In this document: positions 4,426-50,487 of the stretch, piece by piece | How the letters are laid out: every line of letters starts with the position of its first letter | How positions within the stretch are numbered: position 1 is the stretch's first letter | Virus record (IMG/VR): IMGVR_UViG_3300050821_009835 | Span: 124,001 to 188,000 of that record | Length of the DNA stretch: 64,000 nt | Reading direction: 5' to 3' (one strand) | Translations under genes and position numbers: made by a program | Notes under the pieces: generated by a model | What the model was told of the DNA's origin: nothing | Seen by the model: only the letters and a program-made list of their open reading frames with translations | The model's database searches: none

Positions 4426-5220
4426 CTAGTTAGCCACAAGTGCAAGATCAGCCTCGAGCTGTTTCAATACCAAAGGCCATGCGGTTGTAAAGTGATCTAG
4501 CCAGAAGTTGAAGAGCAAGGCGTGACTCTCGTCGCAATAAGTATTCCAGAACGCCCAAGTCATCTTCTGTAATTGACCCCATGTAATGCAAGTTGGGCCA
4601 ACAGAGTCATAGGCAGCAACGATAACGCTGTGGCCACCCCAGCTTCCTGGCTGGCTGTTAGCATCGGTTTTTGGGTCACCAACAACATCCCACACTCCTC
4701 CAACTTGTGACTGAGCTGAGACCGGCAATTGTAAACCAATGTCCACTATCCCAAAGGTTTGAACAGATTGCATAATGTGAAGTGTACTGTTTGGAGAAGG
4801 ATCAGCATAAGCGAACAGAGGGAACTTCTTCTTGTGTGGGTAGGGCTTTCTCTTATGCCCTAAACCATTCTTTCGAACATAATTAAGGACGTCAATGATA
4901 ACGCCCCCTTGATCGGTCGAAGGATCTCCCGGTACATAACCGCAGGCATGTTCATAAAGATTTAGAATCAAGACATCGGGGGGTGTAATTAAACCCACAG
5001 GCGTGTTCAGGGAAACGACCTGATCTCCATGGCCGATGGCGGCGCAAGTACAATTTCCAAGTGTGTCATTAAGCATCATACCCCAATTAGTGACATCACC
5101 AAACCAGCTCAAGCTGGGAGGGGGAGTAGGCAACCCGGCGAATAGTCTTTCAGCTTTGAGCGTTCTTTCATCCACTAGTGGAGCTTTCTTCCCTAATTTC
5201 AGCGTAGTTACATCGAGCAT
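4426..5220 (-). CDS. Papain-like (C1-type) cysteine peptidase
   Basis: LNDTLGNCTCAA catalytic-Cys motif, SWGGHSV His motif, TWG. Confidence 0.7.
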   Translation of the reverse strand: MLDVTTLKLGKKAPLVDERTLKAERLFAGLPTPPPSLSWFGDVTNWGMMLNDTLGNCTCAAIGHGDQVVSLNTPVGLITPPDVLILNLYEHACGYVPGDPSTDQGGVIIDVLNYVRKNGLGHKRKPYPHKKKFPLFAYADPSPNSTLHIMQSVQTFGIVDIGLQLPVSAQSQVGGVWDVVGDPKTDANSQPGSWGGHSVIVAAYDSVGPTCITWGQLQKMTWAFWNTYCDESHALLFNFWLDHFTTAWPLVLKQLEADLALVAN

Positions 5221-6719
5221 GATAAGACTCCTTTTGAAACCACTTTTGACACGTACTCTAAAGGGTACGGTATTTGGGGAATTGGCTTATCCAAGAAGCC
5301 AGAAAGGGCAGCCCAATGATCATTCCCCTCCATGTTCATGACTAACAAATCTTGTGGACGATCTTTAAAATATTCTAGAACTTCAATGTTATGACGGCGG
5401 TAGATTTCCAACATCACATCAGGATTAAAGTCTTTTTGGCCATATAATGCTGAATGAAGTTGGTTGCTGATAGGATAGATATCCCATAAATAGCGGGTTG
5501 GGTTATACCTTGGATCCCACAATCTCGAAATGCTCTTCAACCACTTCTCCTCATCACGAATTGTCAAAATGAATTTGGAGCCGGGGTAAGCTCGGTCCAA
5601 TTTCTGATAAAGAAGAGGAATCGGTAAATCGCAAAGAGAATACCAGCGTTCGAGTGTTTTTGAGCGATATCGCATGACCGTAAAATTGCCACAGGAACAT
5701 TTGCGAATTGTATCTTCAGTAGCACCATATTGCACTGAAGTTTTGCATTCACTATCTCCATGGTGGCCGTGAAAATGCGCGTTGTAATCATGACCACAAG
5801 TGCACAACGGGGAGGTCATCTCGTGCCAAATTAGCGGGGCTTCCCCATTCCCCCAGTGTAGGCTGTCAAATCCAAGAATCTGAAAAGCTTTGTGCAATGA
5901 ATTGGTGGCAGTTTTATGCATGCCAATGCCAAAAACTCTAGTGGGAACCGCTTTCAATTCGGTGGGATTGGAGCCAAAATTCTTAAACACTGTGCCGAGA
6001 CCAAATTTACCGAAATTAACTACGGTTTCAACGCGATTAGAAAGCACCCTGGCCTCATGCTTATTTTCATATTGGCGTGCGTGCGGATATTCTCTAAAGC
6101 GAACCTCGGAACTATGGGGAATTGTTTCCAAGTAGCGATTATCTATGTGTCGCATTGTGTAACCCATGCGCTCTAGGCGATAAATCAAATCCATGTCCTC
6201 TCCTCGCCAAGTAGAGAAGATTTCATCATAACCTCCAGCTTTAACAAAATCCTGCGCCCTAATAGCTAATCTACCCGCATATCCTCGAGCAGGACGAAGG
6301 GGGCCATGCGGAAGACTGTGAATCAAGGGGAAGTCAGGACAAAGGAAAATTCCAGATTCATTAAATTTTTCATTTATGAAACGAGCAAAGCCGTGGCCAG
6401 TGAAATTATCAGCATCAAGAGTCACTAGAATATCCGCACCTTCTAGGATACCCAGTCTTGCTGCTATGTTCTTTGCGTGAGCTACGTGAAAAGGTACATC
6501 TTCTCTGTAACTATAGACATTTAGATAGCCATTAAGAATTGTAAGTTCGTGAACAGTTTGAAGATATTCTAGAAGCCCGTCTTGACTATTGTAGTCCAGA
6601 AGAACGAATTTACAATTAGGATAATTAGCATTATCTGCTAAATTTCGAGGCAAGGTTTGTTTAATATGCTGAGCGCGACCTTTGCAGGTAATACAGAAAA
6701 CAATGCTTCTATCAATCAT
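5208..6719 (-). CDS. GT2/GT7-type glycosyltransferase fused to a sulfotransferase (Sulfotransfer_4-like)
   Basis: N-terminal CITCKGR, TLDADN, GGYDE..W.GEDMDL; C-terminal VFGIGMHKTATNSL PAPS loop and YPGSKFILTIRD. Confidence 0.8.
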   Translation of the reverse strand: MIDRSIVFCITCKGRAQHIKQTLPRNLADNANYPNCKFVLLDYNSQDGLLEYLQTVHELTILNGYLNVYSYREDVPFHVAHAKNIAARLGILEGADILVTLDADNFTGHGFARFINEKFNESGIFLCPDFPLIHSLPHGPLRPARGYAGRLAIRAQDFVKAGGYDEIFSTWRGEDMDLIYRLERMGYTMRHIDNRYLETIPHSSEVRFREYPHARQYENKHEARVLSNRVETVVNFGKFGLGTVFKNFGSNPTELKAVPTRVFGIGMHKTATNSLHKAFQILGFDSLHWGNGEAPLIWHEMTSPLCTCGHDYNAHFHGHHGDSECKTSVQYGATEDTIRKCSCGNFTVMRYRSKTLERWYSLCDLPIPLLYQKLDRAYPGSKFILTIRDEEKWLKSISRLWDPRYNPTRYLWDIYPISNQLHSALYGQKDFNPDVMLEIYRRHNIEVLEYFKDRPQDLLVMNMEGNDHWAALSGFLDKPIPQIPYPLEYVSKVVSKGVLSCSM

Positions 6720-7874: not shown

Positions 7875-8365
7875 GGCATCATATCTCTAATGTAGGCATA
7901 CAATGTATTAAACGGGATCCACCCCTTGTCGTGAGTAAGAAATCCCCAAGTGCGTTTCTTTGCCCCCGTGAACACCAAAGACCAGGCAGGGGCTTTTAAT
8001 TTCAAACGATGAAAATCGGTGGCCTTATGATAAATGATCGATCCTGGGCGCTTCCATTTCTCAGTCTGAAGAGAATCAGAATCGTCAGCCTCAGGATACT
8101 CACAAACCTCGGTATACCCTGTCTTTAAAATAATGGAGACGAAACTCCAGGGATGGTCGTGGCATGCACGTTCATAATCACTGCGAACAATATGGTGAAG
8201 GTAGATATGCGGGCGGTATTTTCCGCGATAGATGTAATACCTTCGTAGATAGAGGTCGTTGTAATTCTCTGTCCCATCTAAATTTACTCCCCAAATATCT
8301 TGATATGGGACTCCGAGACAACGTAAAATACGGTCACCTAACGTGTTGATGTCGGAGACTGGCAT
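7871..8365 (-). CDS. Cupin-fold protein
   Basis: HDHPWSFVSIILKTGYTE and FHRL cupin metal motifs. Confidence 0.6.
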   Translation of the reverse strand: MPVSDINTLGDRILRCLGVPYQDIWGVNLDGTENYNDLYLRRYYIYRGKYRPHIYLHHIVRSDYERACHDHPWSFVSIILKTGYTEVCEYPEADDSDSLQTEKWKRPGSIIYHKATDFHRLKLKAPAWSLVFTGAKKRTWGFLTHDKGWIPFNTLYAYIRDMMP

Positions 8366-8441
8366 TATCGTTGTAATACTGGGAATTTAAGAATACAGCA
8401 CAACAAGGTGAGAAAGGAATGCAGTAAGAATTTCTAGAGAT

Positions 8442-8520
8442 TGGTGGGACAGGTAGGATTCGAACCTACAACGCGCGCATCTTCGGTGCGCCGCTCTACC
8501 GAAATTGGAGCTACTGCCCC
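8442..8520 (-). tRNA. tRNA-Phe(GAA), C33 variant
   Basis: Full cloverleaf; anticodon loop CCGAAGA; encoded CCA. Confidence 0.85.
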
Positions 8521-8524
8521 TCAA

Positions 8525-8990
8525 AATACAGAACACATTTAGACGCCGACTGTGATGTCAGCGACGCTAACGAAACGAGTTATCAATTCACTCCGGACCC
8601 GAGTTTACCGGGGGTACCACTAACTTTTGATAGAAGTTAGAAACTAGAGGAGCGACCAACCAGGCTCGCCGCCACCACCACTCACTCTAAATCAACGACC
8701 GGGGAGTGAGACCCTTAAAATTCAGGACTATACTGCGACTGGCTACGCAGGATCGCGGGACATCTACCCGAGGGTACAGCATTATCGAGCGTCCTGAAAA
8801 CTTTAATTGGCAATCGGCCTCGTAATTTGCAATCCGAGGTAAACGCCGAACCTTGGACATATCGCAATCCGTGCAACCAGATTAGCGCGGTAGCGGTCTT
8901 CAGGCGAAGTATTGATCTTCGATCCGGGTGTGCTGCCCGGTTGCCAGCTGCACTGTAAACAAGCTCGACTGTATTAGAGCCGTGCATCGA
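8525..8990 (-). ncRNA. Candidate ~460-nt structured ncRNA, family unassigned
   Basis: No credible ORF; many perfect hairpins and a multibranch closed by TTCAGGAC/GTCCTGAA; flanked by tRNAs. Confidence 0.5.
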
Positions 8991-8996
8991 AGAAAT

Positions 8997-9069
8997 TGGG
9001 TGCGGTCGCCGGATTCGAACCGGAGTACGAGCTTATGAGGCTGCGTGTGGCCCATTCCACTTCCCCGCA
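8997..9069 (-). tRNA. Degenerate tRNA(CAT), probable pseudo-tRNA
   Basis: CTCATAA loop, TTCGAAT, CCA; mismatched acceptor and bulged anticodon stem. Confidence 0.55.
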
Positions 9070-9074
9070 TAAAT

Positions 9075-9290
9075 CTGGGAGACGCTAGGCGACTCCACTT
9101 ACAAGGCGCAAAGCGCCTCGCTAGATCTCTTTGCCGCTAGTCTTACACCAATCGCTTCTGGCCAGAAACGAATCCAGCGGCTCAAAGGAAGTGACTCACA
9201 ACGTTTCATCAGCTACAACTCCCAGCGTCTAGAACGCATTGACTGACGTTGTACCACTCCGTGCGCCGGGACCAACATACCCAGCTTTAC
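9075..9290 (-). ncRNA. Candidate structured ncRNA
   Basis: Non-coding inter-tRNA segment with stems ACAACGT/ACGTTGT, CGTTTCTG/CAGAAGCG, AGGCGC/GCGCCT. Confidence 0.35.
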
Positions 9291-9319
9291 TTTGAAAATC
9301 TTTCGGGTTCCGTTAAACA

Positions 9320-9396
9320 TGGTAGCGGGGGTGGGATTTGAACCCACGACCTGTTGATTATGAGCCAACCGAGCTGCCAGACTGCTCCACCCCGCA
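9320..9396 (-). tRNA. tRNA-Met(CAT), initiator-like body
   Basis: TGCGGGGTGGAGCAGTCTGG.. fMet-like 5' end, U1:U72 mismatch, CCA. Confidence 0.85.
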
Positions 9397-9398
9397 AA

Positions 9399-9743
9399 TT
9401 ATTCGTACCGGATCAAATACATCGACGGTGCAACGTCATGGACTTCTTGCTGCGATGGTCTTAGCTTCTGACCTTTGCGCTTGAACTCCACAAACAAAAC
9501 TTTACCATCTTTAATGGCAACACGATCGCATACAACCGTGGGTGAGAAGACTTTATACCCCTCTTCTCTCAGCTTCGCAGCCATTGCTTCTTCGGCGGCG
9601 AGTTGATTTCGTCTAGATTGGCTTCCCGTCTCAGACGTAAAAGGCTTCACAGGCTTGTTATGATTCTTCCCACGAAAAGCCTCTAAATTCCTACGTCCCG
9701 CTGCAATCCAAGCGGCGTTGCTTGAACCTTTTGTTGCTTTCAT
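9399..9743 (-). CDS. Free-standing PD-(D/E)XK (VRR-NUC-like) endonuclease
   Basis: CDRVAIKDGKVLFVEFK...LRPSQ motif; lies between tRNAs. Confidence 0.65.
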   Translation of the reverse strand: MKATKGSSNAAWIAAGRRNLEAFRGKNHNKPVKPFTSETGSQSRRNQLAAEEAMAAKLREEGYKVFSPTVVCDRVAIKDGKVLFVEFKRKGQKLRPSQQEVHDVAPSMYLIRYE

Positions 9744-46863: not shown

Positions 46864-46942
46864 TGGAGCGGAAGATCAGATTTGAACTGACGAAATGCTG
46901 CGTTGGAAGCGCAGTGCCTTAACCAGACTTGGCGACTCCCGC
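46864..46942 (-). tRNA. tRNA-Gly(TCC)
   Basis: Loop CTTCCAA; U73; CCA. Confidence 0.9.
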
Positions 46943-46951
46943 AAAACATTC

Positions 46952-47325
46952 GCGCTGAACCTATAGCCAGGATTTTGTCGTGGACGACCATTCCTCTAGG
47001 CCACCCGTTACCGTGTGGCTCAAGCTCTCTACCCGCTGATTCCCCACTTCTTACGAAGTGAACGGGCCGGATCAGCCCTGCTCAGCCTATTTGAGATTGC
47101 TCCACGTGGAGATTGCCCGTTTCACCCTATGCTATGGCTGCGAGCCCCTCCCGCATTTAATCCCCAGTCGAGGGAACCAAGTCACAGACTCGTCTCTGTT
47201 GCTCTAATCGTCATTACGCCTTTCAGCGTAACGCTAGGGAGTTACCCTACACGCCATCCTGTGGAGTCCTGAACTTCCTCGGTAAGCAATTCCATCCTGC
47301 TTAACGCGATCGTCCAGTTCAACGC
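46952..47325 (-). ncRNA. rnpB: RNase P RNA, A-type-like, lacking P13/P14
   Basis: GAGGAAGTTCAGG (CR-I), ACAGAGAC (CR-II), GGGTGAAAC (CR-III), CTCCACGTGGAGCAA, AGAGGAAT (CR-IV), ACAAAATCCTGGCTA (CR-V); P1 GCGTTGAACT/GGTTCAGCGC. Confidence 0.92.
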
Positions 47326-47683: not shown

Positions 47684-47854
47684 CTCGAGGGGTCTCGGGG
47701 ATTTCACGAAACGTTCCAGCCGTCGCTGTCTATCCCAGACCCTGAAAGCCCTAACGTGCACCTACTGGGACTCTGCTCTGCCGCTGAGCTACACCCCTGT
47801 CGGGATGGTTGGATTCGAACCAACGACCTGAGTCCGATCGATGCACAGGCTTTC
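47684..47854 (-). ncRNA. Circularly permuted tRNA-like (YrlA/Y-RNA-like) RNA, copy 1, with 3' extension
   Basis: Order: long stem, T arm (GTTGG TTCGAAT CCAAC), loop-closed acceptor stem, D arm (GCTC AGCGGCA GAGC), long stem. Confidence 0.75.
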
Positions 47855-48951: not shown

Positions 48952-49177
48952 ACATTCTATCGTAAAATAGAAAAGACGCCATTAACAGGCGTCCTCGTTT
49001 TACGATTCGGATGTCTTGTTTTACTCTCCGAATCCCTCCGAGGACACTTGCCCCTCCGCCGCGACGCAGCATTCAGCTGCAGTACCGCTATCTCGCACGA
49101 AAGTGTTATTGGTCGTCATGTTATAATAATACCTAGGTATTTGGAAAATCGGGTATAACTAGTGAAATAAAAACTAA

Positions 49178-49203
49178 AGGCCCGAATCTTCTTCTTCGGG
49201 CCT
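49178..49203 (-). terminator. Intrinsic terminator
   Basis: AGGCCCGAA/TTCGGGCCT hairpin followed by TTAGTTTTTATTT. Confidence 0.7.
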
Positions 49204-49239
49204 TCTACTGCCGATGCCGTCGATCGTTACAGGACAACA

Positions 49240-49275
49240 TTAAAAGTTGAAAGGAACCATGATGGTTTTTCGCAT
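49240..49275 (-). CDS. 11-aa small ORF (MRKTIMVPFNF)
   Basis: Strong AAGGAGG RBS; sits between the large ncRNA and the terminator. Confidence 0.4.
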   Translation of the reverse strand: MRKTIMVPFNF

Positions 49276-49715
49276 AGTTATTGTCCTCCTTTTCTTAAAT
49301 TGCACAAAATTCGATCCCCAGCGAGGCCTATGGTATCCCCGCTTCTTTAAAGAGAGCCAACACCCTCCTCCGTTATTGTAGTCCTCCGGTGTTGGCCTTG
49401 GGCGGAGATCTCTGCCCCGTCGTCGACCGGGTTGGCTCCCTCCGCCTCAATTCACTCGGGTGCATCCTACTTCCAGCGGCAATTTGGTTCCGTTTTAGAC
49501 CTAAAGACTTCTTAGGAATCCAGTTTCGGCAGCACCCGCGCTTTTGCGTTTACATCGTACGCTGTGGACGTGTACCTGACCCGCTCCGACCCGAACGTGG
49601 CCGAACGATCGTTGGCAAACGGCGGCTAACGCTTCCCACAGCTAAACTTAATCCAGGAACGCCCTCCTGCGCTCAACAAGGCAGTTATGCACTATACACC
49701 GTGTTCCCGAACCCT

Positions 49716-50314: not shown

Positions 50315-50487
50315 CTCGAGAGGTCTAGGGGATTTCACGATAGTTCCAGCCGTCGCTGTCTATCCCAGACCCTGGAGCTGTCAACGCATCGTCTACTGAG
50401 GTCTGCTCTTCCATTGCGCTACATCCCCTTAACGGAGAAGGAGGGAATCGAACCCCCGACCTGACCTTATCGACGATACTCTGCTCC
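50315..50487 (-). ncRNA. Circularly permuted tRNA-like (YrlA/Y-RNA-like) RNA, copy 2, with 3' extension
   Basis: T arm GGGGG TTCGATT CCCTC; acceptor-like stem closed by GTTAA; D arm GCGC AATGGAA GAGC; compensatory stem changes versus copy 1. Confidence 0.75.

What the first reader, a model, noticed from the sequence alone, without database searches (positions are those of the whole stretch)
8525..8990. ~460-nt highly structured non-coding island between tRNA-Met and tRNA-Phe
Seen: no credible ORF; serial hairpins, several with 7-nt loops (CCGGG/CCCGG, CGAAG/CTTCG, CTAACTT/AAGTTAG), plus CCTCG/CGAGG, CTCACTC/GAGTGAG and a multibranch closed by TTCAGGAC/GTCCTGAA. It shares the 11-mer GAGTGAATTGA with the 3' part of the 1 kb element near 49450. 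Inference: a second large ncRNA.
Basis: partly seen in the sequence, partly recalled or inferred. Interest (0 to 1): 0.6.

Follow-up and report, generated by a model that had tools for sequence, protein, structure and literature searches.

The report
Composite tRNA-Phe leader with wcaG-like hairpins
The "460-nt structured island" is not one large RNA but a patchwork leader in a soil jumbo phage's tRNA operon: a poorly conserved spacer, a divergent copy of the cyanophage wcaG double hairpin, and a small conserved reading frame plus hairpin just before tRNA-Phe.

Summary
The window lies in a 265-kb IMG/VR jumbo-phage record. All nearby genes and tRNAs are on the minus strand.

The listed hairpins exist, but the island folds no better than shuffled sequence (z -0.7 whole, -0.3 and -1.1 for its halves). 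Only its two 7-bp hairpins exceed chance.

Those two hairpins (8606-8722, minus) match Rfam wcaG at 29.7 bits, below the cut-off of 42. A 463-kb phage has an equal-scoring match in the same position, between tRNA-Met and tRNA-Phe.

A pattern taken from the hairpin finds at least 119 viral loci, with strong covariation. They include canonical wcaG RNAs and five phage tmRNAs that contain the hairpin.

Next to tRNA-Phe lies a leader (8521-8594) with an SD, a 15-codon UUG reading frame holding one Phe codon, and a stable hairpin. Eleven of twelve relatives keep an ATG frame of 17-22 codons ending in TAA.

The upstream ~200 nt (8791-8997) shows no conservation apart from one hairpin. No metatranscriptome contig covers it, whereas one covers 8446-8789.

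The shared 11-mer is chance. The bordering "tRNA-Met" is a degenerate tRNA-like element.

Verdict: real non-coding elements, but a modular tRNA-Phe leader rather than a second large ncRNA.

The parts
8997..9069 (-). Degenerate tRNA-Met-like element with a CUCAUAA anticodon loop, a GGUUCGAAUCC T-arm and an encoded CCA.
   Evidence: ARAGORN at default settings and the Rfam tRNA model do not call it. ARAGORN at -ps80 calls it, with 2 acceptor and 2 anticodon-stem mismatches and a 4-bp T stem. It is 74% identical to a counterpart in relative L137, and a similar element is present in L142.
8791..8996 (-). Variable spacer. It contains the CCGGG (8940-8924), CGAAG (8921-8905) and CCUCG (8839-8818) hairpins.
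   Evidence: It has no significant similarity to any relative. The one exception is the hairpin CAACCGGGCA(GC)ACACCCGGAU in L142, scoring 17.5 against 10.7 +/- 1.5 for shuffles, with a shuffle maximum of 17.5. The fold z-score is -1.13. No metatranscriptome contig covers it, and there is no Rfam hit.
8723..8790 (-).
   Evidence: The metatranscriptome contig covers 8446-8789 with 0 mismatches. Patchy similarity to L142 (GCUCGAU..., AUCCUGC..., UAAGGGUCUCACUCC) was seen by eye in alignment A2.
8606..8722 (-). wcaG-like tandem hairpin RNA. Hairpin 1 is 8714-8672 (CUCACUC/GAGUGAG, 16-nt loop, 3' flank GUGGUGG). The linker hairpin is 8670-8649. Hairpin 2 is 8645-8616 (UAGUUUC-CUAACUU-CUAUCAA-AAGUUAG-UGGU).
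   Evidence: Rfam RF01761 scores 29.7 bits, with E 0.0025 for the 1.15-kb scan and 1.4e-4 per genome, below the gathering score of 42. It is 78% identical to L142. The 463-kb phage G001 has a syntenic match of 29.6 bits. Across 31 distinct hairpin sequences, 97.7% of cells are paired and 5 of 7 pairs show compensatory changes. These are the only hairpins of 7 bp or more in the island.
8539..8594 (-). tRNA-Phe leader. SD GGAG is at 8594-8591. A UUG-initiated mini-frame runs 8586-8539 (translated with table 11 as LITRFVSVADITVGV*, the initiator UUG presumably read as Met) and holds one Phe codon. A stable hairpin at 8567-8542 overlaps its 3' half and UAA stop.
   Evidence: Eleven of twelve relatives carry an ATG frame of 17-22 codons, with F just 5' of a hairpin and TAA 6-22 nt before tRNA-Phe. 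Blastn identity to L142 is 71-81%. The metatranscriptome contig covers it.
8442..8520 (-). tRNA-Phe (GAA), the gene this leader precedes.
   Evidence: ARAGORN. Rfam tRNA model, 50.9 bits.

Best explanation
The island is the modular 5' leader and spacer of the last tRNA gene (tRNA-Phe) in a minus-strand tRNA operon of a soil jumbo phage. It is not one large ncRNA.

Reading 5' to 3' on the minus strand, the pieces are:
1. A degenerate tRNA-Met-like element (9069-8997).
2. About 200 nt of fast-evolving spacer (8996-8791).
3. A divergent wcaG-type double hairpin (8722-8606).
4. An SD, a 15-codon mini-frame with one Phe codon, and a stable hairpin that spans the end of the frame and its stop, 18 nt before tRNA-Phe (8594-8521).

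Shown: the pieces themselves, their conservation and synteny, covariation of the hairpin unit, conservation of the reading frame, and presence in a metatranscriptome.

Inferred mechanism: RNA from about 8790 downstream is made together with tRNA-Phe as one precursor. Ribosomes translating the mini-frame open the leader hairpin. Ribosome dwell time at the Phe codon would then couple read-through or processing of the downstream tRNA-Phe to the supply of charged tRNA-Phe, in an attenuator-like way. The wcaG-type hairpins act upstream as a cis RNA module, either a protein- or RNA-binding element or a stabilising one. The same module is seen inside phage tmRNAs and in front of terminators.
For: Context: the window is G000:124001-188000 of a 264,912-base virus record, with 24 tRNAs in the window, all on the minus strand.

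wcaG-like hairpins:
- RF01761 matches 8606-8718(-) over the full model at 29.7 bits. It is the only such match in the genome.
- Megaphage G001 has a 29.6-bit match in the same place, between tRNA-Met x2 and tRNA-Phe x2.
- Relatives reached through the neighbouring 164-aa protein (L132, L134, L136, L139, L142) also have a hairpin of this type upstream of tRNA-Phe.
- L142 is 78% identical over hairpin 1 and the linker, with covarying stems in hairpin 2 and the linker.
- The pattern AGTTTC-N6-CTRTMAA-N6-GTGGT finds at least 119 viral loci. In 109 of 122 hits the unconstrained positions form a perfect stem.
- Covariation score is 0.688 against 0.189 +/- 0.029 for shuffles.
- Hits include canonical wcaG RNAs at 98, 95, 81 and 47 bits. 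Five Rfam-confirmed tmRNAs contain the hairpin (ARAGORN).

Leader:
- In-frame ATG...F...hairpin...TAA mini-frames occur in L142, L137, L132, L134, L139, G001, L168, L186, L217, L231 and L254 (L207 duplicates L168). The F-to-stop distance takes five different lengths (6, 7, 9, 10 or 12 intervening codons), always a multiple of three.
- Hairpin z-scores range from -1.7 to -5.4.
- No such leader precedes the other 23 tRNAs of the window.

Expression: a soil metatranscriptome contig of 344 nt with 0 mismatches covers 8446-8789. Nothing covers 8790-9179.
Against: - The wcaG match is below Rfam's gathering score. Hairpin 1 has a 16-nt loop and GGGUC in place of GUUUC.
- Thermodynamic folding of the leader block is unremarkable (z -0.30).
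- The window's own mini-frame starts with UUG, not ATG, and one relative (L136) has no in-frame stop.
- The conserved UGUUUA and UAAAC nucleotides also pair with each other. RNA-level selection could therefore explain part of the apparent peptide conservation, and CAAC-CGA is conserved across different frames.
- There is only one Phe codon here (two in three relatives), and no alternative antiterminator structure was identified.
- The hairpin is not followed by a canonical U-tract in the window.
- No sigma-70-like promoter was found near 8790.
- The RNA evidence is Logan contigs. These cannot show strand, ends or a single transcript, and DNA carry-over cannot be excluded.
- Only one reasonably close relative (L142) is available to judge 8723-8997.
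Confidence: 0.6

Rival explanations
1. One reading: one large (~460 nt) highly structured ncRNA, comparable to GOLLD or ROOL RNAs that sit beside tRNAs in phages.
For: The location is a phage tRNA array. Many hairpins are visible. There is no long ORF. Relatives also carry long non-coding stretches at the same place, including a conserved ~300-nt element in L132, L139 and L137.
Against: The fold is no better than shuffles and hairpin counts are at chance. There is no Rfam hit to any large ncRNA at E <= 10. The 8791-8997 half is not conserved even in the nearest relative. RNA contig coverage stops at 8789. The relatives' conserved element is absent from this genome.
Confidence: 0.07
2. The wcaG-like element is a metabolite-sensing riboswitch, as proposed for canonical wcaG. 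It would control the downstream unit: the mini-frame, tRNA-Phe and the genes beyond, including the glycosyltransferase-sulfotransferase at 5208-6719.
For: Canonical wcaG is a riboswitch candidate associated with exopolysaccharide genes (PMC2864571). Here it lies 5' of a reading frame, and a GT2/sulfotransferase gene lies 2 kb downstream on the same strand.
Against: The same hairpin unit occurs singly, inside five tmRNAs. In 86 of 118 loci it starts exactly at a UAG stop codon and sits in front of an intrinsic terminator. These are not 5'-UTR aptamer contexts. The unit is a plain 7-bp hairpin with a 7-nt loop, with no evident ligand pocket. Copy number ranges from one to four.
Confidence: 0.1
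3. This is only processing spacer. The hairpins are incidental or serve merely as RNase landmarks between tRNAs, and neither the mini-frame nor the wcaG match has a specific function.
For: Inter-tRNA spacers in phage arrays are variable. Thermodynamic signals are absent. The wcaG score is sub-threshold.
Against: The hairpin occupies the same position before tRNA-Phe in distant phages. Covariation is strong. Start, frame and TAA stop are conserved in 11 relatives whose hairpins differ in length. No such leader sits before the other tRNAs.
Confidence: 0.12
4. The stretch is a divergent or permuted tmRNA. The tRNA-like piece would lie upstream and an mRNA-like piece with the wcaG-type hairpin downstream.
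For: The hairpin unit lies inside five phage tmRNAs. A T-arm plus CCA element sits upstream at 9069-8997. The genome has no detected tmRNA.
Against: ARAGORN, which also searches for permuted tmRNA, and the Rfam tmRNA models find nothing here. The tRNA-like element pairs with its own 5' strand. It has U1-A72 and a CAU anticodon loop, and no G3-U70. No tag frame ending in a typical ...AA stop was found by eye.
Confidence: 0.03

Closest known systems
wcaG RNA motif (Rfam RF01761; Weinberg et al. 2010, PMC2864571), an orphan riboswitch candidate of T4-like cyanophages
   Same: Two hairpins separated by a small linker hairpin. Each stem is followed by GUGG(U/C)G. Hairpin 2 is preceded by GUUUC and carries the CU(A/G)U(A/C)AA 7-nt loop. 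The match spans the full model. A pattern derived from the window's hairpin retrieves canonical wcaG RNAs scoring 81-98 bits. Those in turn match 77 Synechococcus phage records.
   Different: The score is 29.7 bits, below the cut-off of 42. Hairpin 1 has a 16-nt loop and a GGGUC 5' flank, and the linker is longer. The host is a soil jumbo phage, not a marine cyanophage. The position is inside a tRNA operon, upstream of a mini-frame and tRNA-Phe, rather than in the 5' UTR of an exopolysaccharide or high-light gene.
Phage T4 species 1 and species 2 RNAs (rnaC, rnaD), small stable RNAs in the T4 tRNA cluster
   Same: Non-tRNA RNAs encoded within a phage tRNA array. rnaC ends in a tRNA-like T-arm, as does the degenerate element at 9069-8997.
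   Different: Reading the T4 sequences showed no sequence similarity and no wcaG-type hairpin. Their function is also unknown.
Leader-peptide attenuators of amino-acid operons (my recollection of the E. coli pheA and pheST leaders)
   Same: A short translated frame containing the codon of the amino acid concerned. It overlaps a stable hairpin immediately upstream of a gene of the same amino-acid system.
   Different: There are only one or two Phe codons instead of a run. No alternative antiterminator pairing was identified, and the U-tract is weak or absent in the window. The controlled gene is a tRNA, not an enzyme or synthetase.
GOLLD and ROOL large ncRNAs, found near tRNAs in phages and prophages (my recollection)
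   Same: The genomic setting beside phage tRNA genes.
   Different: There is no Rfam match at E <= 10, no above-chance structure, and no conservation over the full length.
Phage-encoded tmRNA (RF00023)
   Same: The hairpin unit (UAGUUUC-stem-CURUMAA-stem-GUGGUGGAG) is shared with five metagenomic phage tmRNAs. There it lies after the tag frame, where I recall pseudoknots 2-4 normally sit.
   Different: The locus has no tRNA-like domain with alanine identity, no tag frame, and no ARAGORN or Rfam tmRNA call.

Membership tests
wcaG RNA (RF01761) | Covariance-model score at or above the curated gathering score of 42 bits | tested here: not met
   29.7 bits over model positions 1-98. E is 0.0025 for the 1.15-kb scan and 1.4e-4 per genome. 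It is absent from the gathering-threshold scan of the window.
wcaG RNA (RF01761) | Two hairpins, each with a 5' (G)UUUC flank and a 3' GUGG(U/C)G flank, joined by a short linker | tested here: met
   Hairpin 2 is UAGUUUC...GUGGUA. Hairpin 1 is GGGUC...GUGGUGG, so its 5' flank deviates. A linker hairpin lies at 8670-8649.
wcaG RNA (RF01761) | Stems supported by covariation | tested here: met
   For the hairpin-2 unit across 31 distinct sequences, 97.7% of cells are paired against 72.4 +/- 2.0, and 5 of 7 pairs have compensatory changes. Hairpin 1's stem is identical in L142, so it is uninformative.
wcaG RNA (RF01761) | Position in the 5' UTR of exopolysaccharide or high-light genes of marine cyanophages | tested here: not met
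   Here it lies in a soil jumbo phage tRNA operon, upstream of a mini-frame and tRNA-Phe. A GT2/sulfotransferase gene lies 2 kb downstream.
Large phage ncRNAs (GOLLD, ROOL and similar) | A match to the family model, and structure or conservation over several hundred nt | tested here: not met
   No Rfam hit at E <= 10. z-scores run from -0.3 to -1.1. 8791-8997 is not conserved.
tmRNA | A tRNA-like domain with an alanine-type acceptor, plus a tag reading frame | tested here: not met
   No ARAGORN or Rfam tmRNA call. The upstream tRNA-like element has U1-A72 and no G3-U70.
Leader-peptide attenuator | A short conserved translatable frame containing the regulatory codon | tested here: met
   Eleven of twelve relatives have ATG frames of 17-22 codons, each with a Phe codon next to the hairpin and a TAA stop. 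The window has SD plus UUG plus 15 codons.
Leader-peptide attenuator | A terminator hairpin with a U-tract, and a mutually exclusive antiterminator | tested here: inconclusive
   A stable hairpin is present in all (z -1.7 to -5.4). The tail is U/G-rich in relatives, but the terminator scan does not call it in the window. No alternative pairing was identified.
Leader-peptide attenuator | Translation of the leader, and a response to Phe-tRNA supply | not testable with these tools
   This needs ribosome profiling or a coupled in vitro transcription-translation assay.

The most novel reading that the evidence does not exclude
The wcaG hairpin may not be a metabolite riboswitch. It may instead be a translation- or tRNA-linked RNA module of phages.

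The same unit:
- is built into phage tmRNAs;
- abuts tRNA 3' ends in tRNA arrays;
- in most loci begins exactly at a UAG stop codon, just before an intrinsic terminator;
- carries an anticodon-loop-like CU-RUM-AA loop;
- has a 3' flank UGGUGGAG that is the exact complement of CUCCACCA, which I recall as the 3' end of tmRNA and tRNA-Ala.

In this phage the module is combined with a Phe-codon mini-frame and hairpin. Together they could form an autoregulatory attenuator that tunes phage tRNA-Phe production to the charging state of tRNA-Phe in the infected cell.
Probability: 0.15. Interest if true: 0.75.

Novelty: new variant of a known kind. Interest (0 to 1): 0.45.

Why it matters
wcaG has been an orphan riboswitch candidate since 2010.

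This work finds a divergent copy at a conserved position before tRNA-Phe in soil jumbo phages. It also finds the same hairpin unit inside phage tmRNAs, next to tRNAs, and at stop codons in front of terminators. Together these argue that the unit is a general phage RNA module tied to tRNA, tmRNA or transcript 3' ends, rather than a ligand sensor of exopolysaccharide genes. That gives concrete partners to test.

The frame-conserved mini-ORF and hairpin in front of tRNA-Phe would, if translated, be a rare case of a tRNA gene placed under leader-peptide control.

For the scan itself, the result is mainly corrective. Visible serial hairpins in a GC-balanced spacer are at chance level. The 'second large ncRNA' dissolves into smaller parts.

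Tried and rejected
- **Rfam, all 4227 families, E <= 10, over 8300-9450.** Only tRNAs and the sub-threshold wcaG match. No GOLLD, ROOL, tmRNA, group I intron, T-box or RNase P.
- **tmRNA, including permuted forms.** ARAGORN and Rfam are negative. The genome has 29 tRNAs and no tmRNA.
- **BLAST of 8400-9450 against 50,697 phage records.** Only tRNA-Met hits.
- **Pairwise alignment of the island with the syntenic stretch of G001.** Nothing alignable outside the hairpin.
- **Smith-Waterman of 8723-9000 against six relatives, with shuffles.** Only one short hairpin in L142 stands out.
- **Metagenome scan for the window-type hairpin 1.** It returned only the same phage, 100% identical, on a 340-kb contig.
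- **A conserved ~300-nt element shared by relatives L132, L139 and L137.** It is absent from this genome.
- **T4 rnaC and rnaD as homologues.** No similarity on reading the sequences.
- **The 11-mer link to 49450.** Chance.
- **The 90-aa ORF.** No homologues.
- **A common promoter or leader motif before the other tRNAs.** None seen.
- **Sigma-70 promoter or terminator scan of 8300-9500.** At chance level. No minus-strand promoter near 8790.
- **Structure-blind MAFFT plus RNAalifold on the leaders.** It recovered only 3 pairs, because the hairpins differ in length. Per-sequence folds were used instead.
- **Pfam and PHROGs on the ORFs that end at the hairpin's UAG in other phages.** No family.
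- **BLAST of a hairpin-bearing tmRNA (L088) against cultured phages.** No match.
- **Literature searches for wcaG with tmRNA, or for leader peptides before phage tRNA genes.** Nothing relevant.

Full report
**Setting.** The window is bases 124001-188000 of a 264,912-base IMG/VR virus record, estimated 78% complete. An identical stretch lies on a 340-kb soil metagenome contig, so this is a soil jumbo phage. The window carries 24 tRNA genes, all on the minus strand. It also carries a class A RNase P RNA. All neighbouring ORFs run on the minus strand, so I read the island on that strand.

**Checking the observation.**
- The stretch is not unusually structured. The MFE z-score against dinucleotide shuffles is -0.70 on the minus strand and -1.58 on the plus strand.
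- For the two halves it is -0.30 (8521-8790) and -1.13 (8791-8997).
- Perfect local hairpins of 5 bp or more number 6, against 4.5 +/- 2.3 in shuffles.
- Only hairpins of 7 bp or more are enriched (2 against 0.29 +/- 0.54). Those two are CUCACUC/GAGUGAG and CUAACUU/AAGUUAG.
- The 90-aa ORF at 8715-8987(-) has no Pfam match and no homologue. It was not called as a gene in the source record.
- The 'tRNA-Met' used as the upper border (8997-9069) is a degenerate tRNA-like element that only a relaxed ARAGORN run calls. It is nevertheless 74% identical to a counterpart in relative L137.
- The 11-mer shared with 49447-49457 is real but not meaningful. Twenty-four of the island's 11-mers recur elsewhere in the window. 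The best local alignment between the two elements is at shuffle level.

**The two long hairpins are a wcaG-like element.**
- A permissive Rfam scan gives one non-tRNA match: wcaG (RF01761) at 8606-8718(-), full model, 29.7 bits. The gathering score is 42. E is 0.0025 for that scan and 1.4e-4 per genome. The alignment puts the two 7-bp hairpins on the model's two hairpins, each followed by GUGG.
- A 463-kb phage (G001) has a 29.6-bit match. I reached G001 through a distant homologue of the neighbouring 164-aa protein. Its match lies between two tRNA-Met and two tRNA-Phe genes, the same position as in the window.
- I derived a pattern from the two sequences, AGTTTC-N6-CTRTMAA-N6-GTGGT, and scanned IMG/VR. 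In 109 of 122 hits the six free positions on each side form a perfect stem.
- On 31 distinct sequences, 97.7% of cells pair, against 72.4 +/- 2.0 in shuffles. Five of seven pairs show compensatory changes.
- Among the hits, Rfam confirms canonical wcaG RNAs at 98, 95, 81 and 47 bits. Two of them lie beside tRNAs. The canonical type matches 77 Synechococcus phage records.
- The window's element therefore belongs to the wcaG hairpin lineage. It is a divergent variant that fails the curated threshold, in a new host type and a new context.

**Where else the hairpin unit occurs** (seen in passing, but relevant to function).
- In five loci an Rfam-confirmed tmRNA contains the unit: L049, L070, L088, L095 and L124. 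It sits after the tag frame, where I recall pseudoknots normally lie.
- In 20 of 119 loci a tRNA lies within 1.5 kb on the same strand, sometimes directly abutting.
- In 86 of 118 loci the U-AG at the unit's 5' edge is the stop codon of an upstream ORF of at least 40 codons. These ORFs fall into four unrelated clusters, two of them large. The unit is then followed by GGAG, a small hairpin and an intrinsic terminator.
- Copy number runs from one to four.
- These contexts fit poorly with a ligand-sensing 5'-UTR aptamer. They fit better with a general RNA module that binds a partner or stabilises or marks RNA ends.
- The 3' flank UGGUGGAG is conserved in more than 107 of 119 loci. It is complementary to CUCCACCA, which I recall as the 3' end of tmRNA and tRNA-Ala. 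That is an idea, not a result.

**Relatives and the extent of conservation.**
- The 164-aa protein downstream of tRNA-Phe has homologues at 60-76% identity. Their contigs (L132, L134, L136, L137, L139, L142) all carry tRNA-Phe upstream of the gene, and all except L135 carry two copies.
- L142 is the nearest informative relative. Window 8722-8641 aligns at 78%, and 8581-8442 at 71%.
- Window 8723-9000 shows nothing significant in any relative, apart from one short hairpin in L142.
- In L132, L134, L136 and L139 a single hairpin unit is followed by a terminator. In L132, L134 and L139 that terminator is followed by a TATAAT/TATTAT-type promoter, and then the tRNA-Phe leader.
- The stretch between the upstream tRNA and the hairpin differs from phage to phage. 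Some relatives hold another conserved ~300-nt element or small ORFs there. This genome lacks that element.

**The tRNA-Phe leader.**
- The 60-75 nt before tRNA-Phe are conserved across all these phages. Five more were found with a second pattern scan: L168 (with its duplicate L207), L186, L217 (a 456-kb record), L231 and L254.
- Eleven of twelve relatives have an ATG-initiated frame of 17-22 codons. It contains a Phe codon immediately 5' of a stable hairpin and always ends in TAA, 6-22 nt before the tRNA. The peptides include MMHLLQLDLFSVADITVGS, MKLFASTRFTSANVTVGL and MNCISYNLDLFTSRESGL.
- The F-to-stop distance takes five different lengths, all multiples of three. The N-termini differ. The hairpin sequences covary, with z from -1.7 to -5.4.
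- In the window the frame is GGAG-N4-UUG plus 14 further codons. The translation reads LITRFVSVADITVGV*, with the initiator UUG presumably read as Met. It runs 8586-8539, and the hairpin is at 8567-8542.
- The Phe codon is kept despite an indel relative to L142.
- Caveats: the UGUUUA and UAAAC blocks pair with each other, so RNA-level selection may explain part of the conservation. One relative (L136) lacks the stop. The window uses UUG. No canonical U-tract follows the hairpin here.
- No such leader precedes the other 23 tRNAs of the window.

**Expression.**
- A soil metatranscriptome holds a 344-nt contig identical to 8446-8789. That covers tRNA-Phe, the leader, the wcaG-like element and about 70 nt upstream.
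- Neither RNA run has a contig on 8790-9179.
- Several neighbouring genes are covered patchily.
- Contigs cannot show strand, ends or a single transcript, and DNA carry-over is possible. Still, the covered part is the tRNA-proximal part of the island, where the conservation lies.

**Conclusion.** The island is a modular leader, not a second large ncRNA. It has three parts:
1. About 200 nt of fast-evolving spacer after a degenerate tRNA-like element.
2. A divergent wcaG-type double hairpin.
3. A frame-conserved mini-ORF and hairpin leader of tRNA-Phe.

My most likely mechanism is inferred, not shown. The 8790-to-8442 RNA is a tRNA-Phe precursor. Translation of the mini-frame, which depends on Phe decoding, opens the leader hairpin. 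That modulates read-through or processing of tRNA-Phe. The wcaG-type hairpins serve as an upstream cis module that binds a partner or stabilises the RNA.

Identity of the parts: confidence about 0.75. The attenuator-like mechanism: about 0.25.

**Novelty.** A new variant and context of a known motif, plus a possibly new tRNA leader. Interest is moderate.

Noticed in passing
window 46948-47325 (-): A full-length bacterial class A RNase P RNA (170 bits) sits inside the phage's tRNA array, directly upstream of tRNA-Gly (46864-46942). A phage-encoded RNase P RNA is unusual.
   Followed up: no
window 47742-47853 (-) and 50371-50487 (-): Sub-threshold matches to YrlA (Y RNA-like, RF02553) at 44.6 and 30.6 bits, against a cut-off of 69. 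Both lie among the tRNAs. Relatives L132 and L134 give similar weak hits.
   Followed up: no
window 8997-9069 (-); L137:1847-1922; L142:~596-675: A degenerate tRNA-Met-like element (CUCAUAA loop, ...CCGCA(A/C)CCA end) is conserved at 74% identity in L137. The helices that are damaged differ between phages: the anticodon stem here, the T-loop in L137. It may be a functional tRNA-like RNA rather than a dead pseudogene.
   Followed up: partly
L049, L070 (=L080), L088, L095, L124: Five metagenomic phage tmRNAs, confirmed by Rfam and ARAGORN, contain the wcaG-type hairpin unit after the tag frame's stop. I found no report of this in the paper library.
   Followed up: partly
86 of 118 viral loci, e.g. 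L013:4487-4516(-), L020:912-941(-), L023:6094-6123(+): The single hairpin unit begins exactly at the UAG stop codon of an upstream ORF. These ORFs form four unrelated clusters with no Pfam or PHROG match. The unit is followed by GGAG, a small hairpin and an intrinsic terminator, which is a 3'-UTR architecture rather than a 5' UTR.
   Followed up: partly
all pattern loci: The conserved 3' flank UGGUGGAG of the hairpin unit is the exact complement of CUCCACCA, which I recall as the 3' terminus of tmRNA and tRNA-Ala. The 7-nt loop CU-RUM-AA has the form of an anticodon loop. No test was possible.
   Followed up: no
L132:4299-4607, L139:1746-2056, part of L137: Relatives share a GC-rich ~300-nt non-coding element (79% identity between L132 and L139). 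It lies between tRNAs, upstream of the hairpin unit. L132 gives no Rfam match at E <= 1, and the element is absent from this window's genome.
   Followed up: partly
L132:3748-3824, L134:2728-2803, L139:1314-1466: Related jumbo phages encode tRNAs with a CUA anticodon, which ARAGORN labels 'tRNA-Pyl'. These are amber suppressors. None is present among the 29 tRNAs of this genome.
   Followed up: no
window 48952-49715 (-): The '1 kb element near 49450' is a 760-nt tRNA-free gap between tRNA-Ala and tRNA-Val. It has no Rfam match at E <= 5 and no significant similarity to the island.
   Followed up: partly
window 5208-6719 (-): A 503-aa protein that combines a glycosyltransferase family 2/7C region with a Sulfotransfer_4 domain. 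It lies 2 kb downstream of the wcaG-like element on the same strand. Canonical wcaG RNAs are linked to polysaccharide genes.
   Followed up: no
L132, L134 and L139, just upstream of the mini-frame: In these relatives a TATAAT (TATTAT in L139) -10 box lies 4-6 nt before the ATG of the mini-frame. The tRNA-Phe transcript may therefore begin as a leaderless mRNA.
   Followed up: no
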